From assembly GCF_021028975.2 (NCBI RefSeq), contig NC_059439.1, positions 21,948,001-22,012,000 on the forward strand: DNA of 64,000 nucleotides. The letters are read 5' to 3'. Under the pieces are notes generated by a model. It was not told where the DNA came from. It searched no databases and worked only from the letters and a program-made list of their open reading frames with translations. The stretch comes from Sphaerodactylus townsendi. Lineage: Eukaryota. A program made the translations under genes and the position numbers. Below are positions 1,129 to 55,264 of the stretch, in pieces. Within the stretch, counting starts at the first letter, position 1; each line of letters starts with the position of its first letter.

Positions 1129-1380
1129 NNNNNNNNNNNNNNNNNNNNNNNNNNNNNNNNNNNNNNNNNNNNNNNNNNNNNNNNNNNNNNNNNNNNNNNN
1201 NNNNNNNNNNNNNNNNNNNNNNNNNNNNNNNNNNNNNNNNNNNNNNNNNNNNNNNNNNNNNNNNNNNNNNNNNNNNNNNNNNNNNNNNNNNNNNNNNNNN
1301 NNNNNNNNNNNNNNNNNNNNNNNNNNNNNNNNNNNNNNNNNNNNNNNNNNNNNNNNNNNNNNNNNNNNNNNNNNNNNNNN
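1129..1380. other. Assembly gap (252 N)
   Basis: Run of N. Confidence 1.
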
Positions 1381-1680: not shown

Positions 1681-1791
1681 CTTCCAGCAGCTCCACAGCA
1701 CCACAAGCCAGCGCTTCTCTTTCCTGTGACTCAGCTCCACCTGCCAGGAAATCTGAAACTGTAAAGCAAAATGTGCCGGGAAAGAAACCTG
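1681..1791 (+). CDS. Internal coding exon A of LOTUS-domain/CaaX gene (Ser/Ala/Pro linker)
   Basis: Polypyrimidine tract and TTTTTCAG acceptor at 1680; G|GTAAGA donor at 1792; 111 nt, phase 1-1, open frame (ASSSSTAPQ...PGKKP) that joins exon B in frame. Confidence 0.7.
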
Positions 1792-1942
1792 GTAAGAATG
1801 TGTTGTAACTGGGAAAGATTCTAGTCCAGTACGTCCACACACAGGAGGGGGGAGCAGGTGTATGGGCCAACTGGCATCATTTTTGGCAAAATCCATCCTC
1901 AATAAGGTAAGCCTCAGCACTCAGTTGAGGAGTGTCCATGCA

Positions 1943-2545
1943 ATTATTATTATTATTATTATTATTATTATTTATTATATTTATAAGCCGCCCTCCCCCA
2001 AAGGGCTCAGGGCGGCAAACAACAACAATAGAGCACAATAAGATCAATAGCATCAAAATATAAAATCATTAGGAATAGCTCTATATATTAAAACCCAACC
2101 CCATTAAAAGCAGCGTTCTGACATTAAATATATTGATGGCGTCTCTCTAATCAATCCCCTAAAAGGAAAAAAAGCGGGGGGGGGAAAGGGGCGGTAGGTC
2201 TATAGATGTTATAGAGAGAAGCGGGGGGGGGGGGACCATCAGCGGCCGGACCCCTCAAAGGCCCGGTGGAAAAGCTCTGTCTTGCAGGCCCTGCAGAAGT
2301 CATTTAGAGATCCCGCAGGGCCCGCGTAGCTGCAGACAGAGCATTCCACCAGGCAGGGGCCAGAGCTGTAAAAGCTCTGGCCCGGGTGGAGGCCAGCCGC
2401 GTCATTGAGGGACCAGGGATCACCAGTAAATTGGCCTCTGCTGAACGTAGAGGCCTAGTTGGGACATATGGGGCAAGACGGTCTCGCAGGTACGGAGGTC
2501 CCAGGCCGCGCAAGGCCTTAAAGGTCAATACCAACACCTTGAAAT
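1943..2545 (-). mobile_element. L2 LINE 3' fragment
   Basis: Minus-strand ORF 2304-2561 FKVLVLTFKALRGLGPPYLRDRL...TRARAF..APAWWNAL is the L2 ORF2 C-terminus; 3'UTR and (AAT)n tail at 1943-1975. Confidence 0.85.
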
Positions 2546-3627
2546 AATGATTTGTCTGCATTGTGCAGGCTGCTAGGTTTTATGTGTGAACTGTCAGGAA
2601 ACCGAGTGTTTGAAGGACTGCTTGTTCATCTGCAAGCCTTCACCCCTACTAAGATCCTGAGGTCCTGCTTTTGGGCTTTCCATCTTCAGAAGAAAGGTGG
2701 TTGGCCATCAGGGGGAGGGCTTCTTCTGTGTTGGTTGTTGGACTATGGAAGTCTCTTCCTAAATATGTTCATGTACCACTAATGTCATTATCCTGTAGGT
2801 GCCAAATGAAAGCCATTTTGTTTTACCAAGCTTGCCTTTTCTACTGCCTTCTAGAACAGTTCTTAGTTCTGCTACAACTTAGTAGAGGGCTCATGAGGAA
2901 CTGTGGAGAAATAAGCACATGACGTTCTTTTCCCCCTGCCCCCGTGGCAGGGATGCTGACATGGAAAGCCATCTTGCCTCCCAGTTTATTTTTTTCCACA
3001 AGGCCCTCCTGATGACTAATGTGTCCATCGAGCCTCTGTGTGACCCAGCCTATTCTAGCTGACAGCTCTGTGAAAACGAGGACACAAAATGGAGTTTATT
3101 GTAAACCGTTGGGCCCCCCCCAAACTGATTAGTTCACTGTGATTCTGTAGTTTGTATAGAACGTTGGGGTTACACTTTCTGTTAGGAGGCCAGATGGGAC
3201 TGTCTAGAAGGTGTTTCTCTCTTCTCCATGATATCTCCATAACAACCCTGCATGATGGGAAGTAGAGAGAGAGTACCTTCACAGCTTCGCAGAATGGAGA
3301 GCTGAAGTTGAGTCTGATATTATAGGCTTTTGCTAGTCTCGTATGTTCATGTGGCTACCTTCACAAGGTAAGATTAAGACTTTTTCCAGTTCTTACCGGC
3401 TTAATTTCCCCAGGCAACTTCTTGCTTTACCTCTCACTGCAGGAGTTCTGGCCACTACATGCTTACATAATCTGCTGGTGGTTTTCCTGATTGATGAAGG
3501 CTTTCGCTGAAATGTCTAAAGAAAACACATTTGGGTCTGCATTGGCTTGTTGAATATTTGTCCTGGAAAATGTTTCAGATTTTTTAAATTGATATGCTTT
3601 TTGGTTATTTTGTTTTTGCTCCGACAG

Positions 3628-3852
3628 CCGTTTCGGAAGTCTTGGCAGCACTCACCGACCTCCTAAAAACCTATGCGACAGGACTGAGGGTTGAGAAAGT
3701 GCAGGAGTTTCTTCTGGCCTCGAAGGGACTCGATCTGGCCAAGTTCAGCATTGCCCAAGGCTATAAGGATACACTGGAATTTTTGGAGCACAAAATGCCT
3801 AAGCTAAAGATCAAGTACAAAGCGAACAGACTCAAATGTGTTGTTATGCAAG
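3628..3852 (+). CDS. Coding exon B: LOTUS/OST-HTH-like domain 1
   Basis: TTTTTGCTCCGACAG acceptor (AG 3626-3627); CAAG|GTGAAA donor; 225 nt, phase 1-1. Encodes VSEVLAALTDLLKTYATGLRVEKVQEFLLASKGLDLAKFSIAQGYKDTLEFLEHKMPKLKIKY..CVVM, with the LOTUS-type helix-GL-helix and GYxxxxEFL pattern. Confidence 0.75.
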
Positions 3853-4053
3853 GTGAAACAAGGGGGGGGGGGGGCATGGCAATTTGGTTCCCTTCTGTTT
3901 CTTAGGGCAGGCAACCCAATTTAATTGACCTGAGTTCCCAGTCTTGCTTAATGCCCTACATTCAAAATACCTCTAAAGCTGACTCCATATCCTGTTGCCT
4001 CTGAGCTGCTAGCATTAGTTGTCATAGTCATGATAACCAGAAGCTCTTGATTG

Positions 4054-4356
4054 AATAATAATAATAAGAGTTTGGATTTATATCCCCCCTTTCTCTCCTG
4101 TAGGAGACTCAAAGGGGCTTACAATCTCCTTGCCCTTCCCCCCTCACAACAAACACCCTGTGAGGTAGGTGGGGCTGAGAGAGCTCCGAGAAGCTGTGAC
4201 TAGCCCAAGGTCACCCAGCTGGCATGTGTTGGAGTGTACAGGCTAATCTGAATTCCCCAGATAAGCCTCCACAGCTCAGGCGGCAGAGCAGAGAATCAAA
4301 CCCGGTTCCTCCAGATTAGATACACAAGCTCTTAACCTCCTACGCCACTGCTGCTC
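4054..4356 (-). mobile_element. tRNA-derived CORE/MIR-like squamate SINE (Squam3-like), full length
   Basis: Reverse complement begins GAGCAGCAGTGGCGTAGGAGGTTAAGAG (A-box-like) and has a B-box-like GGGTTTGATTC, CORE-like GCTGGGTGACCTTGGGCTAGTCAC and a simple-repeat tail; about 10 related copies in the window. Confidence 0.85.
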
Positions 4357-4962
4357 ATGCCATAAGGATGGCATGCTATGCCTTCTGATTTGTGTGACTG
4401 CTGTTTCCCTAAAATTGTTCAAAGCCATGCAGCAGACTGATGATATTGGCCAAATCTAGGCTTTCTGACAGCTGGAATAATCTTAGAAGCCTTTCCTGAA
4501 AGCCCTCAGCACAATTAGCGTCTCGCTTTTGCTTGTGTATTCATTTTGGCAATGTATATTACAGGGCTGCTCTAAACAGGGTTGCAGTTATCTAGGGGCC
4601 CAGTTAGATGTCCTACCTGTGGATGCTGGTGCAATTTTAGTGCTGAATTTTGGCCACTTAGAACTGCCTCAGTGGGCCTGTCACATGGGACAATCAGGTG
4701 ATCTTGTTTCCACCACGTCCCTTTTCAAGTACCAAAATGGCCCTCAGTCTGTTGAGGTCAGTGGGGTTGGTAACACTGCCCTGGATTTCACTCTTATCAA
4801 ATGGATCTTGGATTCACTAACTCACTCTTGAGCATTTTGCTCGATAAATAATAACTTGTGAGTCTGAGTGAGGTCATGCTTCACTGAGAATAACCCCATG
4901 TTGTAGGCAATTGAATCCACTTTAAGTTTTTTTTAACAAAGAAATTCTTCTCTTCGTCTTAG

Positions 4963-5400
4963 GAAATGGCAAAAAGAAGAGTCAAGACTCTCAAAAGGAA
5001 ATGAAAAAGGGCAAGGAGGAGAGTCCGTCGCTGCCTCACTCTGATATTCCAGCCCAGCAATCAAGAGCATGCCAGTTGGGTAGACAGTCTGAAGTCAGAG
5101 AGTTGCCTTGTCCTACCGATTCCCAGCTGCTAAGCACATCCAGCACATCCCCTTGTTCTGAGCACCTGGATGAACTAAAACAGCAGGTGGCCCACATCCT
5201 TTCTAGGCACCCTGAGGGCATGTCGCTGTTCCAGTTCCGTGCTGCCTACAGCGCCACCTATCAGCATCACCTGCCCCTGGGAAATGCTTCCTCTGCAAAG
5301 CAGCGTCTGCTGGAAATGTCAGACATTGTTTGCATGAAGGGCTGTGGCGTTCAAACGTTACTACTGCCTGTGTCTCCTGCAGAGCCACCTACAAAATCTG
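4963..5400 (+). CDS. Coding exon C: basic/low-complexity linker plus LOTUS/OST-HTH domain 2 (5166-5369)
   Basis: TTCTTCTCTTCGTCTTAG acceptor; TCTG|GTAAGT donor; 438 nt, phase 1-1. LDELKQQVAHILSRHPEGMSLFQFRAAYSATYQHHLPLGNASSAKQRLLEMSDIV..TLLLP fits the LOTUS consensus (lk..v..iL..hp.G..l..f...Y...y...Lp...s....L..m.div). Confidence 0.8.
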
Positions 5401-6683
5401 GTAAGTTCTGTCACGTACAATCTGGTTTAACAGTGTTTATCTGTGCACATGTGTGCATAATCTGATCTTCAACCTGGCCTTCAGCGTACAGAACTGGAAA
5501 CCCGTACAATAGTGGCGGTATGAACTATTTATGCCAAGCTTGGGTGAGTTTTCGGGTTTATTGAAGTATCTTTGATGTAACAAACAAGTGGGTGCTTTTG
5601 TACCTTAGTCTCACAAGATCTCAGCAGCCATTTTGGGAGACTGATGTTTTCTGAGGTTGCCTAAAATGGATGCCAACATTTCCTGAGGTAGTTTTGTCGT
5701 GATTTGGGGGATCTTTTATTCCATTGTGAAAATGAAACACGAGTGGTGGGAGAGGGTAGCACTGAAAATTGTGGGGAAACAGAACCTTGGGTTGTGGAAG
5801 AAAATTAGTCTAAAGTGCGAGGGATGGGGGAAAGGGGAATCTGCTCCCTCCATGGACTTTTCAAGTCCATTCAAGTCCATTCAAGTCCTTTCAAGTCCAC
5901 TTCTAGTGTATTTAGATGGATTGTTTTAAAGCAAATCAACACATCCTCCATAAATAGGAGCTAGGATCCCCCAATTGCCTCTCTGAATTCTCCCAGTGCT
6001 ACAACTTTACACACAATTCAATCTGAAGAATTAGAACTGGAGAGGCAGTATGTAGAGCAACAAAATGTATGGGTGGGAGAAACACTGAAGAAAGAAATAC
6101 ATCCCCCAGTTATCAAGAAAGAACTTCTCTAACTTGATGATGGGAAGGGCCATGACAGAAAAGGTCAATATATTGTGTACTTCTGGTTGAGTAGAGTCCA
6201 ACAAGCTTTACCTGCGTAGCTGAGGTAAATCCTTGAGTAAAGCACTGAAACGTGACTGTCTCTATGGGCAGTGTGAGAGGCCCAAGAGTGGCCAGCAGAA
6301 ATAAGGCATACTTATTTTACTAGCACCTGACATTTATTCTGACTGAGGGGATGTGGTAGCAAATAGAATTTTTAAAACGAATGGCCAAATCAGAAACCTG
6401 CCTGTCTTTACCCAGTCATCACTACCATTTTTTTTAAAGAGCCAGAGATGGCATTGCTTGTTGCGATTCAGCACTAAAGTTCCAGGCTTTGGCCTAAGCA
6501 GCGAACTCTGCTAATAACCTCCTCTGTGGACCTAAAACTTCCTTCAGGTTTCAGTTTTCTTTGTATTGGGCTTTGAGGAGACACGTGTGCCCTGAAGATT
6601 ATTTGTTCTCGCATCTCGCAGGTGCTGCTGATTTATTATCTGCATTGTGGTCTGTCAGTAATTTTTTTCCCTGTGTCTTTCAG

Positions 6684-8398
6684 GCCCACGTATTTCTTCC
6701 AAGGTGGAGAATGGTGCAATACATCCGGCTGACTCTTTGCCCAAAGCTTCGGTGAGTCCTGTACCTGCAGTGGTCCTCAAGCCTTCTGTCCTGGAGACTT
6801 GGATGGAGCCTCCGCCCTGCTCCATTCGCCCCCTGGCTTCAGATCAACTTCGTACGCCTAATGTTAAGGAGAACTGTATTCTGCCTAAGGAGCAATGCCA
6901 AACAGCACCAAAGAGGGCAGCTCTTTTACAGGAGTCGGTGAGGCCCAAATCAAGCTCGGGAGGCCATCTTGCTTCGTCGAAAGCAGAAGAACCTGCAGTG
7001 AACCTTGGCAATTCTTTGCCCAGAACTGCAGTGATTCCACCACAGGCTTACCCTTCCCAGACTGCAGCAGCTCCTGTGCCTCAGCTCCATGCTTCTGTTC
7101 CCTCTACTTCTTCACCAGGTAACCAGGAGAGTTCCTTCCTCCCAGAATCTCATCTCCCAAAACCACCTAAACCATTAGTTCTTGTGGAAAAGGATGCAAG
7201 GGCCAGAGCCTTACCAGGAGATAATGTTTGGAGTCACCACTCCCCTGTAGTCTTCTCTGGATGGGCCAGAGCCGTACCAGGAGATAATGTTCGGAGACAC
7301 CACTCCCCTGTAGTCTTCTCTGCTGAGCCCCAAGTTGGAAATGTGCATGGGAATTGTATATCAGGTGGCTTTGCCTCCAGGGACACACATCTGGTTCATC
7401 CTTCCTTTTCCGTCAACATCCCAGTTCCTTCCCTCTTTCAGCCTGTCCTCACTAATATCATAGCCAGGCCACAGCCGGTTGTGTATTCTTCTCCCATACA
7501 TCTTCCAAACACGCCGGCAAACCCCTCTCACAGATTAGCGTCTGTGCAGTTGGTTTCTCGACCCCAGGTGCAGCCGGTGTCCCAGAACAGACCTGCTCGG
7601 ATGGCACCTCCTAGCCGCCAGCTGACAAGTCCCAGTCAAAGTGTAGAATGGGCTCGCGCTGCCGACGGGCTCGATCAATTGCAGAGTGCTTCCAGAGCAC
7701 AAAGCAGACTTGCTCGGGTGACGCCTTCCAGCCACCAGTTGACAAGTCCCAGTCAGACTGTAGAACGGACAACCTGTGCTCGAGCTGCCGATGGGCTCGA
7801 TCAATTGCAGAGTGCTTCCGGAACACAGGCCCAAAGCCATAGCCCAGCTCCTGCTTTCTGTGCAGGCGGGCGTCCTGTTTCTTTGCCTTCTGTAAAGCCA
7901 CCAGGCCTTCAGTCCCAGAAATCCCCTTCTCTCCAGGAACTGGAAAACGTTCACCATGCATGGCCGAACACTATGGCTTCCACCTTAGTTCCTGTAGCTG
8001 GTAATGGCCAGCAGCCAGCCTGTTCAGCTAGGGCTAAATCTGATGCTCTGCCTTTGAAGCCTCTCGCCTCGACGCCTCAGTCACATCACCTCCCTGTGAA
8101 TTCCGCCAGGACCTCTTCGGCCACACAGCCTGCCGCCTTGTCACTTTCCCCTTCATGTTCTCCCTCCAGCGAAACAAACCAGCCTGCCTATGATTCTTTT
8201 AGGTCTGGTACAGGTAATGATGCTTCCTGTCAAAGCATGACCTTTCCAGGAATGTCCAGCCAAGGTGGAGATGAGCACAGCCACAGTTTCACTTTGCCAA
8301 ATAACCAGAGGAACCACTTCAGGGAGGAACCAACACAGCCTTCTGCTCTGCAGAACAGCCCGGCCGCCAAAAGCTCTAATAATTGTGTCCTCCTCTAA
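6684..8398 (+). CDS. Terminal coding exon D: long Pro/Ser/Gln-rich predicted-disordered tail ending in CaaX (CVLL*)
   Basis: TTTTTTTCCCTGTGTCTTTCAG acceptor at 6683, phase 1 compatible with exon C; 1.7-kb uninterrupted ORF ending AAT TGT GTC CTC CTC TAA. Confidence 0.8.
7200..7322 (+). repeat. Coding tandem duplication, 63 nt (21 aa) x2
   Basis: ARALPGDNVWSHHSPVVFSGW / ARAVPGDNVRRHHSPVVFSAE. Confidence 0.95.
7583..7828 (+). repeat. Coding tandem duplication, ~117-126 nt (39-42 aa) x2
   Basis: QNRPARMAPPSRQLTSPSQSVEWARAADGLDQLQSASRA / QSRLARVTPSSHQLTSPSQTVERTTCARAADGLDQLQSASGT. Confidence 0.95.
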
Positions 8399-9438
8399 AA
8401 TCAAGCAGTTGGGAGATTGCACAATTATTTCTTTTTGTCTTTGAAAGGATGGCAACTAAGATACGCTGGAATAAGAGCATTGAAAACAGTAGTATGTAAC
8501 TAGAAGGTTTATGTGGTTATAATGTATGATATGTGTCTACGAAGAGAGTTCTCAGGTATTTTATATTAATTTTGTATTACTTGTTTCGTGCTTGTCTTGT
8601 TTGTCCTAACTTTGTGTTAAATGAAGTAGTTTTAAAAAGAAACAAAAGGACTCACAATCCACATAACTTTGTATACCCTTTCAACCCTGATCACCCATGT
8701 GCGAGGGGTGTGTGTGGGTATTGTGGTTTGTGTGTGGGTTTGGGAGAAGCAACATCAGCCTCAGACACATCCTATGGGCAGTTTGCGAGTTCTTCTGTTA
8801 CTGAGGCATAAAACAGGAAGGTCCCATGCTGATAGGGAACATCCAAGCTGCTGACAAAACAGAAACAGCCTCAATTTTCCTGTAGGCTGGCATGATATCT
8901 GTGCTAAATGACAGTCAAATATTAATTCTGCACCAAGAGAACTCAGTTTTGTGACCTATGTCCAAAAGCTAATCACAACAAATTTTACCTCACCTAGCCA
9001 TCAATGACAAGGGCCACTGAGAAGGAAAGCCCCCTTTGGCTCTGAAAATCCTATCCAGTCCTGCACCTCTAGGATTTTACCAAGAGAAGAAGCTCTATGC
9101 TCTTTTGACAGGTCTGTGTCCCTGGCAGCCATGAGGGCTAGAATCTTTTTTTCTTCTTCATGCACAATTGCATGTTTTTTTAGAATTTTTTAGAAAACAT
9201 AGTTTTGATGAAAAATCTAGTTCTTCCAGTGCCTTTGATTATTGAATCTAATTGGAGCCATGGGGTAGTCATGTCCATTTAGTGCTTATTGTGGGGAAGG
9301 AAGTGATGTAAATAAAATTGCACAAAGGATTTATATCCATTGGTATGCTTAGTGCAGTGATTGTCCCAAAAAGATGACCTCCACCCCTTTGTGTTTGTTT
9401 GTTTTTCCTTTGAGTACATCCTTTTTGTTCTTGTGATC

Positions 9439-9444
9439 AATAAA
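9439..9444 (+). terminator. Candidate polyadenylation signal of the LOTUS/CaaX gene (alternative at 9311-9316)
   Basis: AATAAA about 1 kb after the stop codon, in AT/U-rich 3'UTR-like sequence and before the next repeat. Confidence 0.4.
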
Positions 9445-9729
9445 GTCTATTTTCTCATGTCACTGAAAACCGTTCTTTTAAAGTCATTACTTGCTGAAGT
9501 CAAAAGGCTAAGTGGTGATGCCTCTTTCTGAAACCATCTTCTTGGAAAACAAGAGCTTATTTAGAATCGGTTCACTGAAGGCATTCAGACCTTTGTTTAA
9601 ACGTACTTGTTTGTTCTTTGGAATTTGATATCCCCACACATACTGCAGTCAGTTTTACAGTTGTGTTCACAATGCTGTCTGTGCCACAGCACACCTCTAT
9701 ATTGGAACCGAGCAAGCCTAGAAGATCAG

Positions 9730-10575
9730 ATAAACTTTAATGTCATTGTGCACACACAATGAAAATACAAACATCCCCTGATGCACGTTTCTGCAGTCCT
9801 CATACCCCATTTTCCACAATCCCCCTTCCAACCATCCCGCCACAGCCACGTCAATGCAACACCATGGAGGTCAGCATAGCCACATCTCTAGAATAGAAGC
9901 TGTCTCTGAGCCTAGTTGTCCTTGTTTTTATGATCCTGTACCATCTGCCAGATGGTAATATTTCAAAAAAAGAGTATGCAGGGTGAGACGGGTCTTTCAG
10001 AATATTCTGAGCTTTCTTTAAGAAGCGGAAATTATAGGGTGTTTCCCCACTTATCTGCTGCTGCGTGCTACTCTCCCCAAGTTCCCCGGCACTCCCCACT
10101 ACAGGGACAGCGACAACACAGCCGCCCCGATGCTGCCGCTGTCACGCCCCCTCAGCATGTGTCATTCCTGGCCCTAAAGAAAACGGCACCTTTTGATGAC
10201 GTGGGGAAGCCTGGGAGCGTGCCAGAAATGATGCGCACTGGAAGAGTAGTGGGGCACTCTATCAGCAACGGACACTCCTGGGTAAGTCTGGTGGAAACTT
10301 GACCCATCTTCATACAGGCTCCCTGCGTGGAACTCACTCAAGATCCTCGCGAGGGTCTGACAGCTGGAGGAAGAGTGTTCCATTTCATAGAGGGGAGAGG
10401 CTGTAAAGGCCCTGGCCTGCAGAGGCCAGCCACGACTACGCTGAGCTCTGAGCTTTAAACAGCATCTTCCGCCAATAATTCTCTGGACAGTAATTATCAC
10501 CCTGTGGAGCGCCTTCCTATCTGCCACTGTGCAACTGGCAAACCATACACAGATAGAGTATGTCAGGACTCACGT
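9730..10575 (-). mobile_element. Rex1/Babar LINE 3' fragment, interrupted at 10037
   Basis: FLKKAQNILKDPSHPAYSFFEILPSGRWYRIIKTRTTRLRDSFY and ADRKALHRVIITVQRII are Rex1 RT C-terminal motifs; homologous to the copy at 26.5-27.8 kb. Confidence 0.8.
10037..10305. mobile_element. Probable PIF/Harbinger-type MITE inserted in Rex1
   Basis: Left end GGGTGTTTCCCCACTTATC after ATA; degenerate inverted end GGTAAGT..GGAAAC..ACCC; GC-rich interior. Confidence 0.45.
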
Positions 10576-10949
10576 CCAGCCAATTGCCACACACACGGCT
10601 TGGGATGGGGCTTAACGCAACCGGTAAAAAACAACACAAAACATTGTAATTCAGTGGTTACTTTTTGTATACACAGCAGACTGTTTTGCTTCTGAGATCT
10701 ACTGAGACTGGGTTAGCTTGGACCATCCAGGTCAGAGTACCCCCCAAGTTATAACTAGAGAGGGGGGGGGGGATTTTGAGCTGCAGGGAGGGGAAAACGT
10801 GCCCTTCTACAATACTTGTAAAGAACATTGGGGCTGAAATGAAAAGGGGTTGTCCACTAGACTACATTTAAACTCAAAGATCTCACTAAAATAAACTAAG
10901 AAGTCAATTGCCAGAGTTGCACACGGGGATAGAAAAAGAAGGCCAACTG

Positions 10950-13752: not shown

Positions 13753-14688
13753 ATGTCTAATATAAGCACCACAAATGATTTCCTGCTTCTGGGATTTTCA
13801 GATGTCCGAGAGTTTCAGATCTTATATTTTGTGTTGTTTTTAGGACTATACCTGGTTATCTTTATGAGCAATCTTCTCATCATTGTCCTGATAACTCTCA
13901 ATTCATACCTCCATACTCCGATGTATTTCCTTCTTCTCAATTTATCCATTATTGATCTTGGATCCGTAACCATTACCTTTCCCAGAGCCATGGCCAATGA
14001 CCTCACGAACAGAACACAGATTTCCTATTCCGAATGTGTTGCGCAGGTATATTTTTTCACCTCTCTCATCTCAACAGATGTTTCCCTGCTCACAGTTATG
14101 GCTTATGATCGATATGCTGCCATCTGCCAGCCTCTACGTTATCCTTCTCTCATGGGCAAGAGAGCGTGCTTGATAAAGGCAGGTGGAGCATGGGTTGCGG
14201 GCTTTCTGAACGCAGCCTTACACACTTGTGCGACTTTTTCAGAGCCCTTCTGCTCCAACACTGTCAACCAGTTCTTCTGTGAAATCCCGCAGCTCCTGAC
14301 ATTGTCTTGCTCTGGATTTAACTTCACTGAATATGCAGCTCTTACCTTTTCCTCATTATTTGCCACCAGCTGCTTTGTTTTTGTTATTGCTTCTTATGTA
14401 CAAATCTTTTCCACGGTATTGAAGATGCCTTCTCTGGAGGGAAAGCGAAAAGCCTTCTCTACATGCCTCCCTCACCTCATGGTGGTATCCTTGTTTTATG
14501 GCACTGCCTTCTTTGCCTATATGTTGCCAACTGCCAGTTCAGATCAAAGGTTTACCATGCTATATACCATATTACCACCAATGCTGAATCCAATCATTTA
14601 TAGCATGAGGAACAAAGACGTGAAAACTGCTCTGTGGAAGCTGTTCAATGGGAATGTCCTAGCTCAGAGTCAGAAATTCCACTTTTGA
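13753..14688 (+). CDS. Olfactory receptor, OR14-like (class II), intact, 311 aa
   Basis: LHTPMYF, MAYDRYAAIC, FFCEIP, KAFSTC..H and PMLNPIIYSMRN motifs; N-terminal NIS glycosylation site; single-exon CDS. Confidence 0.95.
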   Translation: MSNISTTNDFLLLGFSDVREFQILYFVLFLGLYLVIFMSNLLIIVLITLNSYLHTPMYFLLLNLSIIDLGSVTITFPRAMANDLTNRTQISYSECVAQVYFFTSLISTDVSLLTVMAYDRYAAICQPLRYPSLMGKRACLIKAGGAWVAGFLNAALHTCATFSEPFCSNTVNQFFCEIPQLLTLSCSGFNFTEYAALTFSSLFATSCFVFVIASYVQIFSTVLKMPSLEGKRKAFSTCLPHLMVVSLFYGTAFFAYMLPTASSDQRFTMLYTILPPMLNPIIYSMRNKDVKTALWKLFNGNVLAQSQKFHF

Positions 14689-21626: not shown

Positions 21627-22580
21627 ATGTCCAATGTTACCATCGTAACGGGTTTCCTGCTGCTGGAATTTTCTGAGGAAAGAATGCTTCAGATTCTACA
21701 CTTTGTCGTCTTCTTAGCAATGTACTTGATGGTCATGATAGGGAACCTCCTCATCATCATCTTGGTAACCCTCAACACCCACCTGCACACCCCAATGTAC
21801 TTCTTTCTCATCAACTTGTCAGTGGTTGACCTTGGATCTACCTCTGTTACGATTCCTAAAGCCATGTTCAATGCACTCATGAACACAAGGTGGATTTCAT
21901 TTTATGAGTGTGCTGCACAAATGTTTTTCTTTGTCCACTTCCTGTCATCAGATATATTCCTCCTCACCATTATGGCCTATGATCGATATGTTGCCATCTG
22001 TTACCCACTGCACTATGTATCTGTCATGAACTGGGGACGCTGCATCCAGATGGCAAGTGGGGCATGGATTGGAGGGTTCCTAAATGCTCTTCTTCACACA
22101 GGGACAATTTTTTCAATGCCCTTCTGCTCTAACATTGTCCGGCAGTTCTTCTGTGAAATTCCATATTTAATGAAGCTTGCCTGTTTTAATTCCTACCTCA
22201 ATGAAATTTGGGCACTTGTTTTTAGTGCATCCATAGGCTTTGGCTGTTGTGTCTTTATATTCATGTCCTATGTGCAGATCTTCACTGCAGTGTTAAGAAT
22301 GCCCTCAATGGAAAGTAGACAAAAAGCCTTCTCAACTTGTATCCCCCACCTTATTGTTGTCTTCCTGCTAACTGGTACTGGTATCATTACCTACTTCCTG
22401 CCAACCTCCAGCTTTCCATCCAGTGTAAATCAAATGTTTGCTGTACTCTACTCTGTGGTCCCACCGATGATGAATCCAATAATCTACAGTATGAGGAATA
22501 AGGATGTCAGGGATGCTCTGCGGAAGTTGGTTGGCAGGAAGCGTCCAGTAGAGAGTAAGATGTCTTATGCTGACCTATGA
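21627..22580 (+). CDS. Olfactory receptor, OR14-like, intact, 317 aa
   Basis: LHTPMYFFL, MAYDRYVAIC, KAFSTCIPH and PMMNPIIYSMRN motifs; NVT glycosylation site; splice acceptor CTTCTTCCAG 6 nt before the ATG. Confidence 0.95.
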   Translation: MSNVTIVTGFLLLEFSEERMLQILHFVVFLAMYLMVMIGNLLIIILVTLNTHLHTPMYFFLINLSVVDLGSTSVTIPKAMFNALMNTRWISFYECAAQMFFFVHFLSSDIFLLTIMAYDRYVAICYPLHYVSVMNWGRCIQMASGAWIGGFLNALLHTGTIFSMPFCSNIVRQFFCEIPYLMKLACFNSYLNEIWALVFSASIGFGCCVFIFMSYVQIFTAVLRMPSMESRQKAFSTCIPHLIVVFLLTGTGIITYFLPTSSFPSSVNQMFAVLYSVVPPMMNPIIYSMRNKDVRDALRKLVGRKRPVESKMSYADL

Positions 22581-26532: not shown

Positions 26533-27770
26533 AAACTAAGCATAAGCCTAAGCATAAGTTTTTTATTGTCATTGTGCACGCACAACGAAATTTACAGCAG
26601 CATTCTTTGATGCACACAATTTCAGACTCATACCCCATCCTCACTACACAGCCCCAAACACATCAACACGAAGCCGCGGAGTTTAGCATAGCCACAGCTC
26701 TAGAGTAGAAGCTGTCTCTAAGCCTCTTTGTCCTGGTTTTGATAGACCTGTATCGTCTGCCGGATGGTAACAGTTCAAAAAGAGAGTGTGCTGGATGAGA
26801 CGGGTCTCAGAATATTTTGGGCTTTTTTTAGGCTTTGGGAATTATAGGCTGATTCCGCATGGGCCAAAAACAGCAGTGTGAAAACAGTGTAAAAATGGTG
26901 TAAAAGGGTTTAAAATGGTGTAAAAGGGTTTATACTGTTTTCATACTGTTTTCACACTGCTGTTTTTGGCCCATGTGGAATCAGCCATAGAGTTCTTCCA
27001 ATGAGGGGAGAGGGCAGCTGATAATCCTCTGTGCAGTAGTGATCACCCTTTGGAGTGCCTTCCTATCTGCCACTGTGCAACTGGAGAACCATACACAGAT
27101 GCAGTAGGTTAAGGCACTCTCTATAGCACAGCAGTAAAAGGACACCAGGAGTTTTCCATTCAGTTGTTGTTTCCTTAAAAGTCTCAGATAATACAGTCTT
27201 TGCTGGCCCTTCTTAACCACCACGGCAGTCTGTACGCCCCAGGTCAAGTCCTCTTTAATCATGATGCCCAGAAATTTAAAACTAGCCACCTGCTCTACTT
27301 GATCTCCATTTATAGTCAAGGGCTGAATTTCTGAGCTATTCCTTCTATAGTGTACTATGGGCTCCTTTGTCTTACATTGAGTGTTAATGGGAGCAAGTTT
27401 ATTTTTTCCCTGCACCGCGCCCAGAGCGAATTGATTACCTCACTCCGATAAGGCAGACTCATCCCCTCCAGAGATGAGCCCCACCACCCGTTATGTAATC
27501 GGCAAATTTGATAATGGTGTTACTATGATGAACAGGAATTTTTGCAATCATATGTATAAAGGGTGAACAATAGGGACTCAACACACAACCCTGTGAAGCG
27601 TTCCCATGTTTAGAAGCCGAACTGAGGAAACCCGATTTCCCAGTCTAACCCTCTGGGAACGTCCAGACAAGAAGTCCCTAATCCACAAACAGATTGAATG
27701 TGAGAGTCCAAGATCCACAAGTTTTGTCACCAGTCTTTGTGGTAAGATTGTATTAAATGCGGAACTAAAG
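26533..27770 (-). mobile_element. Rex1/Babar LINE, 5'-truncated RT remnant
   Basis: Minus-strand ORF with VEQVASFKFLGIMIKEDLTW..KKGQQRLYYLRLL..AIESALTYCICVWF; upstream degenerate QGCVLSPLLF and KFAD motifs; short tandem 3' tail. Confidence 0.85.
26847..26986. mobile_element. PIF/Harbinger-type palindromic MITE nested in Rex1
   Basis: ~40-bp TIR GGCTGATTCCGCATGGGCCAAAAACAGCAGTGTGAAAACAGT; TSD ATA. Confidence 0.85.
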
Positions 27771-28630: not shown

Positions 28631-29596
28631 ATGGATACAGTACATGAAGTGCGGCAGAATGCCACAGTTGTCACTGAATTTATACTCCTGGGACTCTCCA
28701 GCAATCCTGAAGCCCAGCTCATTCTTTTTGGTCTCTTTCTGCTCATCTACTTGGTGGTCCTGATTGGGAACACCCTTCTTTTCCTCCTCATCAGTTTCAA
28801 CAAAAGTCTCCATAGCCCCATGTACTTCTTCCTGGGTAATCTTTCTCTAGTAGACATTGGGTATACCACTTCCACAGTGCCCAAGATGCTGACAAATTTT
28901 CTCTTCCAGGACAGGACTATTTCCATAGCTGGTTGCTTCTCCCAGATGTACTTCTTTATCTCCTTTGGTGGCATCGAATGCCTCCTGCTAGGTGTGATGG
29001 CGTATGACCGATATGCTGCCATTTGCCACCCCCTGCATTACAGTGTGCTCATGAGGCCCCAAGTTTGTATCATTTTAGCAGCTACTGCTTGGATTCTAGG
29101 CTTGGCTAACTCAGGCGTGCACTCCGGCATGCTTTCTCGTTTGTCCTTCTGTCAGGACAATGTCATCCATCACTTTTTCTGTGACATCCCACCCCTTTTC
29201 CAGCTGTCTTGTTCTGACACCCAAGCTAATCAAATTGCTACCTTTGTAGTGGGTGGAGGTGTGGTAATGAGTTCCTTTCTGGTTACTCTCGTGTCTTACG
29301 TATACATAGCAATGGCCATCCTCAGGATCCGCACCAAAGAAGGGCGTCTCAAGGCTTTCTCGACCTGTACCTCTCACCTCACTGTAGTAAATATTTACTT
29401 TGGCACCATAATTTTCACATACCTGAAGCCCAACTCCACATATTCTCAGGAGCAGGACCGAGCCTTGCCTGTTCTGTATGGGATCATTGTACCTATGCTT
29501 AATCCAATTATATACAGTTTACGGAATAAGGATGTGAAAAGGACACTTTGGAATGCCGTGGGTAGTTCTAAACAAGATAAAGTGATCAATTTGTAA
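28631..29596 (+). CDS. Olfactory receptor, OR5V1-like, intact, 321 aa
   Basis: [37 protein letters not shown] and PMLNPIIYSLRN motifs; NAT glycosylation site; TCTCTCACAG acceptor directly before the ATG. Confidence 0.95.
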   Translation: MDTVHEVRQNATVVTEFILLGLSSNPEAQLILFGLFLLIYLVVLIGNTLLFLLISFNKSLHSPMYFFLGNLSLVDIGYTTSTVPKMLTNFLFQDRTISIAGCFSQMYFFISFGGIECLLLGVMAYDRYAAICHPLHYSVLMRPQVCIILAATAWILGLANSGVHSGMLSRLSFCQDNVIHHFFCDIPPLFQLSCSDTQANQIATFVVGGGVVMSSFLVTLVSYVYIAMAILRIRTKEGRLKAFSTCTSHLTVVNIYFGTIIFTYLKPNSTYSQEQDRALPVLYGIIVPMLNPIIYSLRNKDVKRTLWNAVGSSKQDKVINL

Positions 29597-35542: not shown

Positions 35543-36509
35543 ATGGAGTCTCCATGCCAAACGTTGCAGAATGTCACAACTGTCACTGAATTTATACTTC
35601 TGGGACTCTCCAGCGACCCTGTAACCCAGGTCATTCTCTTTGGTGTCTTCCTGCTTATCTACTTGGTGGCCCTGATGGGGAACATTCTTATCCTTCTTAC
35701 CATCAGCTTGGATGACAAACTTCACAGCCCCATGTACTTCTTTCTGGGCAACCTCTCTATGGTAGATATTGGGTATACAACAGCCATTGTCCCCAAGATG
35801 CTGATGAATTACCTCTCCCAGGAAAAATCTATCTCTCTATCTGGTTGCTTATCCCAACTGTTCTTCTTTATCTCTTTTTTGGTGTGGCATTGAATGCCTC
35901 CCTGCTAGGAGTGTCATGGCATATGACCGAGTATGTTGCCATTTGCCCATCCCTTTGCATTACAGAGTGTTCATGAGAGCTTTCGCAAAGTCTGTGCCTC
36001 TTTAGCAGCCACTGCTTGGATTCTGGGCTTGGCTGAATTCAGGTGTACACACTGTAGCCTGATGTCCCGCTTTGTCTTTTTTTGTCCAGGACAATGTCAT
36101 CCATCACTTTTTCTGTGATGTCCCACCTCTCTTGCAGCTTTCTTGCTCCAACACTCAAATCAATCAAATTGCTGTCTTTGTGGTAAGTGGAAATGTGATC
36201 ATTGGTTCCTTTGTGTTGACACTAGTGTCCTATGTCTATATAGTGGCATCCATCCTCAGGATCCGTACAAAGGATGGGCGTCTCAAAGCCTTCTCCACCT
36301 GTGCTTCTCACCTGACTGTAGTCAACATATTTTATGTCGCTGGAATCTTTACCTACTTTCTCCCCAGCTCTCCTTCCTCTCCTGAAAAGAATCAGGTGCT
36401 TTCTGTTATGTATGGGATTATTGCACCTATGCTTAATCCTATAGTATACAGCCTGAGGAACAAGGATGTGCAAAATGCCCTTCAAAAAGTAATAGGTAAG
36501 GTGAAATAG
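35543..36509 (+). pseudogene. OR5V1-like OR with clustered frameshifts (pseudogene or assembly error)
   Basis: Intact N-terminal (35543-~35875) and C-terminal (~36085-36509) halves with all OR motifs; several 1-2 nt insertions between them. Confidence 0.85.
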
Positions 36510-40591: not shown

Positions 40592-41527
40592 ATGGAAAGA
40601 AAGAACCAAACACATCTGAAAGAGTTTATTCTCCTGGGTCTGTCTGATGATCCTAATACCGAACCATTCCTTTTTGCGACAGGGCTGTTGATATACATGT
40701 TCACATTAGCAGGGAATCTGGCCATTATTATTTTAATACAGATTGACCAGCATCTCCACACCCCAATGTATTTCTTGCTGAGCCATTTGTCCTTTACTGA
40801 GATCTGCTACATCACCTCCACCATGCCAAAGATGTTATGGGTTCTTCTGTCGGGGGACAAGACCATCTCACTCCCTGGCTGTGCAGTCCAAATGTATTGC
40901 TTTCTAACCACAGTGGGTACGGAAGACGTTCTACTTACAGTCATGGCATATGATCGTTATGCTGCCATCTGCCACCCATTGCATTACATGCTACTCATGA
41001 ATCAGTCCGTGCTCAGATGGCTCATAGCAGCTTCGTGGGCCGTTGGAAATATTAATGGTGTTGTCAACACAGCCTTTATTTTCTCCCTGAATTTTTGTGG
41101 TCCCAATAAGATTGTGCACTTTTTCTGTGATATCCCACCTGTCTTGCATCTCTCTTGCTCTGACACTTCATTTGCTGAACTAGTGACTTTTATTGTCTCT
41201 GGAAGCATCATAACAGCAACTGTCTCCTTAATTGTCCTCTCCTATGCACTTATTGTCTTATCTGTGCTCAAAATCAGTACGGCTCGGGGCAGGATCAAGA
41301 CATTCTCCACTTGTGCCTCCCACCTTACTGTGGTGACTATCTACTACAGCACAGGCATCTTTACTTACCTGAGGCCTTCCTCCCGTCACTCCATGGAAAA
41401 TGGCCGTGTGATCTCTGTGTTATATACCATCGTCACTCCTTTGTTAAACCCTCTGATCTACAGCCTCAGGAACAAAGAAATGCAGGTAGCACTTCAGAAT
41501 GTTCTCGGAAAGAAACAAAATTGTTAG
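40592..41527 (+). CDS. Olfactory receptor (class II, OR5V1/OR10-like), intact, 311 aa
   Basis: LHTPMYFLL, MAYDRYAAIC, HFFCDIPP, TFSTCASHL and PLLNPLIYSLRN motifs; NQT glycosylation site. Confidence 0.95.
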   Translation: MERKNQTHLKEFILLGLSDDPNTEPFLFATGLLIYMFTLAGNLAIIILIQIDQHLHTPMYFLLSHLSFTEICYITSTMPKMLWVLLSGDKTISLPGCAVQMYCFLTTVGTEDVLLTVMAYDRYAAICHPLHYMLLMNQSVLRWLIAASWAVGNINGVVNTAFIFSLNFCGPNKIVHFFCDIPPVLHLSCSDTSFAELVTFIVSGSIITATVSLIVLSYALIVLSVLKISTARGRIKTFSTCASHLTVVTIYYSTGIFTYLRPSSRHSMENGRVISVLYTIVTPLLNPLIYSLRNKEMQVALQNVLGKKQNC

Positions 41528-42620: not shown

Positions 42621-42810
42621 NNNNNNNNNNNNNNNNNNNNNNNNNNNNNNNNNNNNNNNNNNNNNNNNNNNNNNNNNNNNNNNNNNNNNNNNNNNNNNNN
42701 NNNNNNNNNNNNNNNNNNNNNNNNNNNNNNNNNNNNNNNNNNNNNNNNNNNNNNNNNNNNNNNNNNNNNNNNNNNNNNNNNNNNNNNNNNNNNNNNNNNN
42801 NNNNNNNNNN
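42621..42810. other. Assembly gap (190 N)
   Basis: Run of N. Confidence 1.
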
Positions 42811-43765
42811 GAGGATATGATTGAACATTTAAATGGGGAGGGAAAGAAAAGGAGAGGAACACCTGAATCATTCTGATGCCGAAGAACTGTTACTCTTAAC
42901 CATCTTTCATAATTGTCAAGCAGATCAGTTACTGAAACCCTGTTCACAGATTATACTTTCTGTATGCACAATCCATGCCCATGGGATACTTGATTGTTCT
43001 TTGTATGTGCACTGAGTAATTCTCATGTTGCAGTCAGCATGCATGTAGCTGAAAATTCAGGCATCGGCCCCCATTTTCATTCATGCTACACATGGCAGCT
43101 CTTTCCTACAAACAAATATAACCAAGATGTACATGCATGTAGCACGTGAGACAAATACTGATTTACAATAATTACACCCCCAGCAGAGCACTTTGCTCAA
43201 TGGATAACAACTCGTTGGTGGTTCCTGGCCCAAAAGATTAGGAGCCAGAGTGGTGGGCAAAAAAGAATGGGAAGGAACACTTTTTACAGTGTACAGGAGG
43301 GGACTGCACAGCTGGGGATGGAACAGGGCTACCAAACTCCAGGTGGGATCTGGACATCTTCCAGAATTATAACTGGTTTCCAGGTTGCATTGATCAGTTC
43401 CCTGGAGAAAATGGCAGATTCAGCGGGCAGAGTTTATAGCATTAAAGCTTCTCCTCTCCCAAACTTCTCACAACTCACCCCACAAAATTTCCCAAGCTGG
43501 AACTAGAAGAAAAGAAGAGGAGGAGGAGGAGGAGGAGGAGGAAGAGTTTGGATATATACCCCATCTTTCTCTCTTGAAAAGTGACTCAAGGTGGCTTGCA
43601 AGCTCCTTTCCCTTCCTCTCCCCACAACAGACACCTTGTGAGGTAGGTGGGGCTAAGCAGAGGTGTAGCTGCAATGGGGACGTCTGGGGCAGCTCGCCCT
43701 GGGCACCACCATTTCAGTCACATGGGAAGGTGGGGCTGGGGGCATTTCGGGGCAGAGCATGTTGA

Positions 43766-44036
43766 ATACATAGCAATGGCCATCCTCAGGATGGTGTGTC
43801 TCAAGGCTTTCTCGACCTGTACTTCTCACCTCACTGTAGTAAGTATCTACTTTGGCACCATAATTTTCACATACCTGAAGCCCAACTCCACATACTTCCA
43901 GGAGCAGGACCGAGCCTTACCTGATCTGTATGGGATTGTTGTACCTATGCTTAATCCAATTAAATACAGTTTATGGAATAGGGATGTGAAAAGGACACTT
44001 TGGAAAGCTATGAGTAGTTCTTAATAAGATAACGTG
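43766..44036 (+). pseudogene. 3' fragment of the 28631-type OR
   Basis: YIAMAILR..KAFSTCTSHLTVVSIYFGTIIFTYLKPNSTY..PMLNPIKYS; 5' two-thirds missing. Confidence 0.9.
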
Positions 44037-55097: not shown

Positions 55098-55264
55098 CCC
55101 CTTTGTGATACATTTATGCTGTCTGTACTGAAAAAGTATGCTGATCATGGACAGTGAATAATAAAAGCTGACTGCTGTCTTTTATTGTTGTCTTTATGAA
55201 ACTGCTGGCATGCATAGATCAAACTGCCATACGCACATCCGCCAAAAAGGCTCCACTGTCCTGC

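What the first reader, a model, noticed from the sequence alone, without database searches (positions are those of the whole stretch)
1681..8398. Unrecognised tandem-LOTUS protein with a long disordered tail and a C-terminal CaaX box: candidate membrane-anchored RNA-granule scaffold
Seen: four exons (1681-1791, 3628-3852, 4963-5400, 6684-8398) with canonical splice sites, all phase 1. They splice into one ORF of at least 829 codons; the 5' end is not identified in the window. Exons B and C each encode a ~70-aa helical unit with LOTUS/OST-HTH signatures, followed by ~570 aa of Pro/Ser/Gln-rich sequence ending CVLL*. Established: the vertebrate LOTUS proteins I know are TDRD5 and TDRD7 (LOTUS plus Tudor) and MARF1 (NYN, RRM, LOTUS). 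They act in germ granules, piRNA/transposon control and mRNA decay, and none is known to me to end in a CaaX box. No Tudor, RRM or NYN domain follows the LOTUS pair here. Inference: this may be a separate LOTUS family that tethers RNA or RNP condensates to membranes through a lipid anchor, for example germ-granule/Balbiani-body anchoring or an endomembrane RNA sensor.
Basis: partly seen in the sequence, partly recalled or inferred. Interest (0 to 1): 0.85.

Follow-up and report, generated by a model that had tools for sequence, protein, structure and literature searches.

The report
Lipid-anchored multi-LOTUS protein gene
The four exons are the real 3' two-thirds of a gecko gene for a protein with six LOTUS (RNA/helicase-binding) domains, a long floppy tail and a conserved lipid-attachment signal; it belongs to an unnamed, unstudied family found from sharks to reptiles but not known in mammals.

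Summary
Observation confirmed. The four exons are open in one frame with AG/GT sites. They equal residues 399-1226 of NCBI's predicted "uncharacterized protein LOC125445258 isoform X2" of the gecko Sphaerodactylus townsendi (1226 aa); the first ~400 residues lie upstream of the window. The full protein has six LOTUS/OST-HTH units, not two (exon B = unit 5, exon C = unit 6). A ~580-aa Ser/Pro-rich tail follows, ending CVLL.

Homologues occur in sharks, coelacanth, lungfish, amphibians, turtles, crocodilians and squamates, with a reduced copy in one bird. All are "uncharacterized" or misnamed (mucin-like, PRR36-like). None has a Tudor, NYN or RRM domain, so this is not TDRD5, TDRD7 or MARF1.

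Of 70 members with a long tail, 66 end C-x-x-L. The commonest boxes (CVIL, CIIL, CVLL) are fully geranylgeranylated by human GGTase-I in a published reporter assay.

Best reading: a geranylgeranyl-anchored, multivalent minimal-LOTUS scaffold that holds RNA or RNPs at a membrane. Domains, family and motif conservation are shown. Lipidation, RNA binding, tissue and pathway (germline versus antiviral) are inferred. No RNA-seq was available and no paper on the family was found. It is a new architecture within a known domain class. The scan had separately noted only the CVLL stop on this window.

The parts
1681..1791 (+). Exon A: Ser/Ala/Pro-rich linker between LOTUS units 4 and 5 (P0003 residues ~399-435)
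   Evidence: Open frame, AG acceptor and GT donor. Identical to P0003 399-435. No Pfam hit.
3628..3852 (+). Exon B: one complete minimal LOTUS unit ('type B', DUF7515-like), unit 5 of 6. The exon is symmetric (225 nt), so one exon equals one domain.
   Evidence: AF2 mean pLDDT 94.4, pTM 0.80. Foldseek top hits are LOTUS domains of Tejas 8wxs (TM 0.78, prob 1.00), TDRD5 3s93, TDRD7 3rco, Oskar 5cd7 and MARF1 5yad. Pfam DUF7515 E 0.0033 alone and above threshold in full-length relatives. No helix follows the last strand.
4963..5150 (+). First part of exon C: Lys-rich then Ser/Gln-rich disordered linker
   Evidence: pLDDT below 50 for residues 1-63 of the exon C model. Sequence composition.
5151..5363 (+). 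LOTUS unit 6 ('type C'), the most conserved unit of the family
   Evidence: AF2 pLDDT ~85-92 over residues 63-133. 20 invariant columns among 27 squamate sequences. phmmer hit to TDRD7 LOTUS 2ly1, E 0.009; profile hits TDRD7 0.0084 and TDRD5 0.078. The same unit in the shark orthologue passes Pfam OST-HTH gathering (28.8 vs 23.8 bits). Language-model neighbours are OST-HTH clusters, 0.92. VIA Z 6.2 to TDRD7, not separable from other winged helices.
6684..8383 (+). Exon D: ~566-aa Ser/Pro/Ala-rich tail without a domain; contains a 63-nt x2 tandem repeat at 7200-7322
   Evidence: Pfam finds 0 families. Composition S15 P13 A11 %, net charge +12. TRF repeat. 40% identity to the Heteronotia orthologue versus ~70% in unit 6. 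Of the listed differences from related genomic runs, 17 of 24 in this exon change the amino acid and none creates a stop.
8384..8398 (+). CaaX box Cys-Val-Leu-Leu (P0003 Cys1223) plus stop codon
   Evidence: 66 of 70 family members with a tail of at least 150 aa end C-x-x-L. CVLL, CVIL and CIIL are completely geranylgeranylated by human GGTase-I in a yeast reporter (PMC11152559).

Best explanation
Shown: window 1681-8398 holds the last four exons of a real protein-coding gene (NCBI LOC125445258, Sphaerodactylus townsendi). Its 1226-aa product is an array of six LOTUS/OST-HTH winged-helix units, each roughly one symmetric exon, followed by a ~580-aa disordered tail and a C-terminal CVLL box. 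It belongs to an unnamed family that is inherited vertically from cartilaginous fish to sauropsids. The number of LOTUS units varies between lineages, tandem gene copies are frequent, and the C-x-x-Leu end is nearly invariant. Inferred: GGTase-I attaches a C20 geranylgeranyl group to Cys1223, followed by the usual -aaX cleavage and methylation at the ER. The lipid then fixes the protein to the cytoplasmic face of a membrane. In this gecko there is no polybasic or palmitoyl second signal, so endomembranes are the default target. The tail would act as a long flexible spacer and possible condensate driver. The LOTUS units in the window lack the extra C-terminal helix and are therefore 'minimal' LOTUS, so the array would bind RNA multivalently, G-rich or G-quadruplex RNA by analogy. 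The result would be a membrane-tethered RNA/RNP scaffold. Tissue and pathway are unresolved.
For: Gene model.
LOTUS fold and homology: unit 5; unit 6; full-length proteins pass Pfam OST-HTH and DUF7515, and the two Pfam models overlap on the same units in oyster TDRD5 and in lungfish.
Architecture across the family.
Range and lack of names. The tree of unit 6 follows the species tree (squamates 99/98, geckos 99/93, sauropsids 100/99).
CaaX: (66 of 70; the last residue is always Leu). Reporter data for CVLL, CVIL and CIIL: PMC11152559.
Minimal LOTUS binds G4 RNA but not Vasa, and tandem units are proposed to raise avidity: PMC7498356.
No helix follows the last strand of either unit.
Against: No lipidation, localisation, RNA-binding or expression data exist for any member. 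No RNA run was found, and the laid runs were genomic contigs. Unit 6 cannot be told from other winged helices by structure alone. Its profile does not match the unit-5 profile significantly (hhalign E 0.073). The exons alone are below the Pfam thresholds. Second membrane signals differ between lineages: polybasic in lungfish and some turtles, Cys-Cys in frogs, none in geckos. The target membrane may therefore differ or matter little. The N-terminal unit, outside the window, was not folded and could be an extended, helicase-binding LOTUS.
Confidence: 0.55

Rival explanations
1. Germline-specific version: the protein tethers nuage, germ granules or Balbiani-body RNPs to membranes and recruits the DEAD-box helicase DDX4/Vasa, as Oskar, Tejas, TDRD5/7 and MIP-1/2 do.
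For: Animal LOTUS proteins studied so far act mainly in the germline (PMC7498356; PMC8331183). The best structural match of unit 5 is the Vasa-binding LOTUS of Tejas. LOTUS plus disordered regions is the MIP-1/2 design.
Against: Units 5 and 6 lack the alpha-5 helix needed for Vasa binding. The family is present in animals with and without maternal germ plasm, for example frogs and salamanders. One member (P0014, Micrurus) is held only by UniRef with no genome contig. From memory, that species' UniProt entries come from venom-gland transcriptomes, which would mean somatic expression; this is unverified.
Confidence: 0.2
2. Innate-immunity version: a membrane-targeted RNA-binding restriction factor or sensor, positioned like prenylated OAS1 p46 or ZAP-L at the endomembranes where RNA viruses replicate.
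For: A CaaX box that places an RNA-binding protein on endomembranes is a proven antiviral design (OAS1 p46, PMC8357416). The family shows tandem gene copies (Anolis, Bufo, Emydura, Ambystoma and alligator). Unit number varies from 1 to 8 type-B units. A recent internal duplication in this gecko left units 2 and 3 identical at 64 of 73 residues. The tail changes fast. These traits are typical of conflict genes. The gene lies beside fast-evolving chemoreceptor clusters.
Against: No effector domain (nuclease, synthetase or PARP) is present. No induction data exist. Fast-evolving tails and tandem copies are also common in reproductive genes. Unit 6 is strongly conserved, unlike a typical arms-race surface.
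Confidence: 0.2
3. The conserved C-x-x-L end is used for something other than stable membrane anchoring, for example a prenyl-dependent protein contact or chaperone-escorted shuttling. Alternatively the LOTUS units act purely as protein-protein modules.
For: A single geranylgeranyl group gives only moderate membrane affinity (general knowledge). Extended LOTUS domains bind proteins.
Against: CVLL, CVIL and CIIL are optimal GGTase-I substrates. C20 alone suffices for endomembrane association of many CaaX reporters (general knowledge). RNA binding is the most conserved LOTUS activity.
Confidence: 0.12
4. It is merely a divergent orthologue or fragment of TDRD5, TDRD7 or MARF1, or a pseudogene or annotation artefact.
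For: The only PDB sequence hits are TDRD7 and TDRD5 LOTUS domains, and they are weak.
Against: Full-length proteins have no Tudor, NYN or RRM domain, whereas a true TDRD5 (oyster) shows OST-HTH plus Tudor in the same scan. An intact 1226-aa ORF has orthologues across ~450 My and a conserved C-terminus.
Confidence: 0.02

Closest known systems
TDRD5 / TDRD7 (vertebrate LOTUS-Tudor nuage proteins)
   Same: Several tandem LOTUS/OST-HTH units. They are the closest sequence hits in the PDB (TDRD7 2ly1, TDRD5 3s93) and close structural hits.
   Different: No Tudor domains; six units instead of three; a long disordered tail; a C-terminal geranylgeranylation box; a separate orthologue series from sharks to reptiles.
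MARF1 (NYN-RRM plus 6-8 minimal LOTUS units)
   Same: A long array of minimal LOTUS units, proposed to give avid RNA binding (PMC7498356). The MARF1 LOTUS 5yad is among the structural hits.
   Different: No NYN nuclease and no RRM, hence no catalytic part; it has a CaaX box and a tail instead.
C. elegans MIP-1 / MIP-2 and Drosophila Oskar / Tejas (LOTUS scaffolds of germ granules)
   Same: LOTUS domains combined with long disordered regions that act as organising hubs (PMC8331183). The Tejas LOTUS is the best structural match of unit 5 (TM 0.78).
   Different: Those use extended LOTUS with helix alpha-5 to bind Vasa. Units 5 and 6 here lack it. None of those proteins is reported to be prenylated. 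There is no sequence-level orthology.
Prenylated RNA-binding antiviral proteins (OAS1 p46; ZAP-L from general knowledge)
   Same: A C-terminal CaaX box places an RNA-binding protein on endomembranes (PMC8357416).
   Different: Unrelated folds and no homology; those have or recruit effector activities. The resemblance is one of design only.
GGTase-I substrates with the same boxes (CDC42 and others, PMC11152559)
   Same: CVLL, CVIL and CIIL are completely geranylgeranylated by human GGTase-I in a reporter assay.
   Different: Those are small GTPases or other folds; only the last four residues are shared.

Membership tests
LOTUS / OST-HTH domain superfamily (Pfam PF12872 and the overlapping PF24359 DUF7515) | ~70-80-aa winged helix-turn-helix fold that matches solved LOTUS domains best | tested here: met
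   Unit 5: AF2 pLDDT 94; the top 9 Foldseek hits are all LOTUS (Tejas TM 0.78, TDRD5, TDRD7, Oskar). Unit 6: a confident winged helix, but Z 6-7 to many winged helices, with TDRD7 at Z 6.2.
LOTUS / OST-HTH domain superfamily (Pfam PF12872 and the overlapping PF24359 DUF7515) | Profile match above Pfam's gathering score | tested here: inconclusive
   Window exons alone fall below threshold (18.0 vs 27 bits; 14.4 vs 23.8 bits). The full-length protein P0003 and its orthologues pass for both models. The orthologous unit 6 of the shark passes OST-HTH (28.8 bits).
Extended (Vasa-binding) LOTUS subclass | Additional C-terminal helix alpha-5 after the winged-helix core | tested here: not met
   Unit 5 ends at the last strand, and the next exon is disordered with pLDDT below 50. 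Unit 6 is followed by a Pro-rich segment with pLDDT ~50. Units 1-4, upstream of the window, were not folded.
TDRD5 / TDRD7 | Tudor domain(s) C-terminal to the LOTUS units | tested here: not met
   No Tudor hit in exon D, in P0003 or in 15 other family members. The positive control, oyster TDRD5, shows Tudor at E 9e-23.
MARF1 | NYN ribonuclease and RRM domains N-terminal to the LOTUS array | tested here: not met
   No NYN or RRM hit in P0003 or its relatives, whose N-termini begin directly with a LOTUS unit.
CaaX proteins modified by geranylgeranyltransferase I | Cys at position -4, aliphatic a1/a2, Leu at the C-terminus, directly before the stop | tested here: met
   CVLL then stop at 8384-8398. 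66 of 70 long-tailed relatives end C-x-x-L. CVLL, CVIL and CIIL are fully modified by human GGTase-I in a reporter (PMC11152559).
CaaX proteins modified by geranylgeranyltransferase I | Actual covalent geranylgeranylation and membrane association | not testable with these tools
   This needs metabolic labelling, a mobility shift, and a Cys-to-Ser mutant.
The unnamed shark-to-reptile multi-LOTUS-CaaX family (defined here) | N-terminal LOTUS array, then one conserved 'type C' unit, then a long disordered tail ending C-x-x-L | tested here: met
   P0003 has units at 2-76, 96-168, 169-241, 294-367, 436-509 and 571-647, then a tail and CVLL. Its unit 6 nests within geckos and squamates in the tree.

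The most novel reading that the evidence does not exclude
This is a fourth vertebrate LOTUS family, as old as jawed vertebrates and absent from mammals. It would be the first LOTUS protein fixed to membranes by a geranylgeranyl lipid. It would hold G-rich or G-quadruplex RNAs, or RNP condensates, on the cytoplasmic face of endomembranes, either to organise germline or oocyte RNPs or as an antiviral RNA trap.
Probability: 0.4. Interest if true: 0.8.

Novelty: new variant of a known kind. Interest (0 to 1): 0.62.

Why it matters
The field's working list of vertebrate LOTUS proteins is TDRD5, TDRD7 and MARF1; PMC7498356 says mammals have only these three. This window shows a further, ancient family that model mammals lack and nobody appears to have studied. 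Its design is unreported for this domain: a variable array of minimal LOTUS units on a long flexible tether with a conserved geranylgeranyl anchor. If the anchor and RNA binding are real, it gives a natural example of a lipid-tethered RNA/RNP scaffold. It also gives a testable link between membranes and RNA granules or RNA sensing. Anolis, Xenopus-type frogs and axolotl are tractable species for testing it. The loss in mammals and the reduction in a bird pose a clear evolutionary question.

Tried and rejected
- Exon D as a word-index query found only one relative, the Heteronotia orthologue.
- A profile of 14 full-length members (A3) was swamped by low-complexity words and returned only its own first sequence. 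That search was wasted.
- No RNA runs hold the locus. The four holders are genomic. Laying three of them gave contigs only, so there is no splice, strand or expression evidence. A cluster of insertions at 7036-7044 in run X4 could not be checked for frame.
- The look-up of encoding contigs had no record of P0003, so the upstream exons of this species were not fetched.
- hhalign of unit-6 against unit-5 profiles was not significant.
- phmmer of whole P0003 against the PDB gave nothing useful.
- VIA-align could not separate LOTUS from other winged helices for unit 6.
- Literature searches found nothing on the family: LOTUS plus prenylation, 'HTH OST-type domain-containing', DUF7515, and six LOC identifiers.
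- Rejected readings: a TDRD5/7/MARF1 orthologue (no Tudor, NYN or RRM), and the automatic names 'mucin-like', 'PRR36-like', 'SRCAP-like' and 'GSG1L2', which are low-complexity matches or a fused gene model.
No complex prediction with DDX4, for the same reason.
- The N runs at 1129-1380 and 42621-42810 were left untouched.
Full report
1. THE OBSERVATION

Each is preceded by a pyrimidine tract plus AG. Exons A-C are followed by GT. Exon D ends ...SSNNCVLL and a stop codon at 8396-8398.

An independent check came from the databases. The protein P0003 is NCBI 'uncharacterized protein LOC125445258 isoform X2 [Sphaerodactylus townsendi]', 1226 aa. By tblastn it aligns to exactly these four exons at 95-100% identity, with exon D at 100% over 572 residues. 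Its residues 399-435 are identical to the exon A translation. The residues at the three junctions (Ala, Gly, Gly) are what the split codons allow.

The first ~398 residues are encoded upstream of base 1. Each exon was searched by reference, and P0003 stood in for the whole protein.

2. WHAT THE PROTEIN IS

Pfam on the exons alone gives only sub-threshold hits: DUF7515 at E 0.0033 on exon B and OST-HTH at E 0.036 on exon C. It finds nothing on the 570-aa exon D. On full-length P0003 and its relatives both models pass their thresholds. The two models overlap on the same units in an oyster TDRD5 and in the lungfish member, so DUF7515 is an OST-HTH-like profile.

Exon B. AlphaFold2 with a family alignment gives a very confident 74-residue winged helix (pLDDT 94.4, pTM 0.80). 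Its nine best Foldseek matches are all solved LOTUS domains: Tejas 8wxs (TM 0.78, prob 1.00), TDRD5 3s93, TDRD7 3rco/2ly1 and Oskar 5cd7. MARF1 5yad ranks lower in the same list.

Exon C. Residues 1-62 are disordered, and 63-133 form a confident winged helix. Structure alone cannot separate it from other winged helices: Z is 6-7 for cullin WHB, BpuJI and others, and 6.2 for TDRD7. Sequence evidence does separate it:
- phmmer and profile hits in the PDB are TDRD7 (E 0.009 and 0.0084) and TDRD5.
- It aligns to the protein's own N-terminal OST-HTH unit.
- The orthologous unit in a shark passes Pfam OST-HTH.
- Language-model neighbours are OST-HTH clusters, score 0.92.
A profile-profile comparison of the exon C type with the exon B type was not significant.

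Profiles built here from the two unit types find six units in P0003, at 2-76, 96-168, 169-241, 294-367, 436-509 (exon B) and 571-647 (exon C). Units 2 and 3 are identical at 64 of 73 positions, which indicates a recent internal duplication. The window's coding exons A-C are 111, 225 and 438 nt, all multiples of three and in the same phase. Exon B is exactly one unit, and in the alligator and Anolis loci the units also sit in separate open segments. This structure lets units be gained and lost without breaking the frame.

Neither unit in the window is followed by a helix. Both are therefore 'minimal' LOTUS in the sense of Jeske et al. 2017, as summarised in PMC8331183 and PMC7498356.

The tail is Ser 15%, Pro 13%, Ala 11%, net charge +12. 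It contains a 63-nt tandem duplication at 7200-7322.

3. THE FAMILY

A word-index search seeded with the unit-6 region of the Heteronotia orthologue found 28 squamate proteins from geckos, iguanians, Varanus, a skink and snakes. Most are 1100-1350 aa and are named 'uncharacterized' or, wrongly, mucin-like, FLO11-like or adhesin-like.

An exhaustive phmmer run used the N-terminal-only snake fragment P0014 against 1.84 billion representatives. It gave 103 hits at E below 0.001. I looked up names for 30 of them. They come from:
- sharks (Heterodontus, Cetorhinus)
- coelacanth and lungfish
- a caecilian
- salamanders (Ambystoma, Lissotriton, Pleurodeles)
- frogs (Pyxicephalus, Bufo)
- many turtles and both alligators
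- one bird (Ammospiza, 291 aa)
- an oyster TDRD5, as a distant outlier

None carries a curated name. No mammal or teleost appeared among those looked up, but about 55 hits were not looked up, so their absence is not proven here. PMC7498356 states that mammals have only three LOTUS genes: TDRD5, TDRD7 and MARF1.

The common plan is one to eight exon-B-type units, then one exon-C-type unit, then a long tail. Salamanders have two C-type units and the lungfish has seven. A tree of the C-type unit follows the species tree: sauropsids 100/99, squamates 99/98, geckos 99/93, snakes 99/95. The window's gene lies inside the geckos. It has only 77 columns, so deep forks are unreliable.

Tandem gene copies occur in Anolis, Bufo, Emydura, Ambystoma and alligator. 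The sparrow locus keeps only a C-type unit inside a Pro-rich open frame and shows no CaaX end.

4. THE C-TERMINUS

Among 70 family proteins with at least 150 residues after the C-type unit, 66 end in C-x-x-L. The counts are CVIL 13, CCIL 13, CLIL 12, CIIL 10, CVLL 4 and others. None of the 25 truncated models does.

In a humanised-yeast reporter, CIIL, CTIL, CVIL and CVLL were completely geranylgeranylated by human GGTase-I (PMC11152559). Conservation over the whole span from sharks to squamates, in an otherwise poorly conserved tail, is strong evidence that the box is used.

The twelve residues before the Cys hold one Lys and no Cys in this gecko. The lungfish (KKKK) and some turtles are polybasic, and frogs have Cys-Cys.

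5. MECHANISM

Shown: the domains, the architecture, the family and the motif conservation.

Inferred: geranylgeranylation of Cys1223, with processing at the ER, anchors the protein on a cytoplasmic membrane face. Endomembranes are the default when there is no second signal (general knowledge). The tail acts as a spacer. The minimal LOTUS array binds RNA multivalently. PMC7498356 shows that minimal LOTUS domains from bacteria to mammals bind G-rich and G4 RNA but not Vasa, and it proposes that tandem units raise avidity.

Two narrower readings remain open.
For it: the germline bias of known LOTUS proteins and the MIP-1/2 and Oskar analogy. Against it: the missing alpha-5 helix in units 5 and 6, and a possible somatic transcript (P0014 is held only by UniRef, without a contig; its venom-gland origin is from my memory and unverified).
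- Endomembrane antiviral RNA binder, in the manner of OAS1 p46 (PMC8357416). For it: the tandem copies, the variable unit number and the fast-changing tail. Of the differences from related genomic runs that the reads tool listed, 17 of 24 in exon D change the amino acid and none creates a stop; this is only part of all differences. Against it: no effector domain and no induction data.

6. CONTEXT

Downstream, from 13.7 to 62.3 kb, the window holds an olfactory-receptor cluster on the + strand. In Anolis the next gene is a class-C (V2R-like) receptor. In alligator an older annotation fuses the family member with an upstream GSG1-like claudin-type gene, and RPL28 lies beyond it. In the sparrow NDUFA3 is adjacent. 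From memory, human RPL28 and NDUFA3 both lie in 19q13.42, a region with no LOTUS gene. This would fit a loss in mammals, but it was not tested.

7. NOVELTY AND VERDICT

The gene exists in databases only as an automatic prediction. Full-text searches found no paper on the family, on DUF7515 or on LOTUS plus prenylation. The domain class is well known. The architecture is not described: a LOTUS array with no Tudor, NYN or RRM, a long tether and a conserved geranylgeranyl box. Nor is its phyletic pattern.

I rate it a new variant of a known kind, interest 0.62. The anatomy and evolutionary evidence are solid. The function is entirely inferred.

Noticed in passing
window 13753-62338, + strand: Olfactory-receptor gene cluster (Pfam 7tm_4). 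Six intact single-exon genes lie at 13753-14688, 21627-22580, 28631-29596, 40592-41527, 47383-48336 and 55196-56218. Broken copies lie at 35543-35893 plus 36072-36509 (one receptor split in two frames), 43647-44024 and 61817-62338.
   Followed up: partly
window 47383-48336 and 55196-56218: Two olfactory-receptor genes whose products are nearly identical by eye. This suggests a recent tandem duplication of about 8 kb.
   Followed up: no
window 26981-27415 (-) and 10174-10527 (-): Retroelement-like ORF fragments that share the motif ...DRKAL.RVI.T.QRII.... The first hits Pfam ALKBH8_N (E 1.5e-11), a model that from memory often matches the tails of reverse-transcriptase ORFs.
   Followed up: partly
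window 2450-2650 and 4050-4450 (introns of the LOTUS gene): Word depth in three genomic runs jumps by four to six orders of magnitude, with hundreds of joints and loose ends (GAA/GAG-rich). These are high-copy repeats or simple sequence inside the introns.
   Followed up: no
window 1129-1380 and 42621-42810: Runs of N (252 and 190 bases).
   Followed up: no
P0003 residues 96-168 and 169-241 (upstream of the window): LOTUS units 2 and 3 of the same gene are identical at 64 of 73 positions. This is a recent internal duplication of one unit in this gecko lineage.
   Followed up: partly
L004 (Alligator mississippiensis AKHW03006198.1) 10001-30822: The GenBank model 'germ cell-specific 1-like protein 2 isoform B' (P0132) is a fusion of a GSG1/claudin-like gene with the neighbouring multi-LOTUS gene (GSG-1 domain at residues 7-82, then LOTUS units). 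It is an annotation error that gives the family a misleading name.
   Followed up: partly
L003 (Ammospiza caudacuta CM051216.1) 9020-10873: The only bird relative seen keeps one exon-C-type LOTUS unit inside a 618-codon Pro-rich open frame next to NDUFA3. It has no exon-B-type units and no CaaX end in the model, so it may be a reduced or decaying copy.
   Followed up: partly
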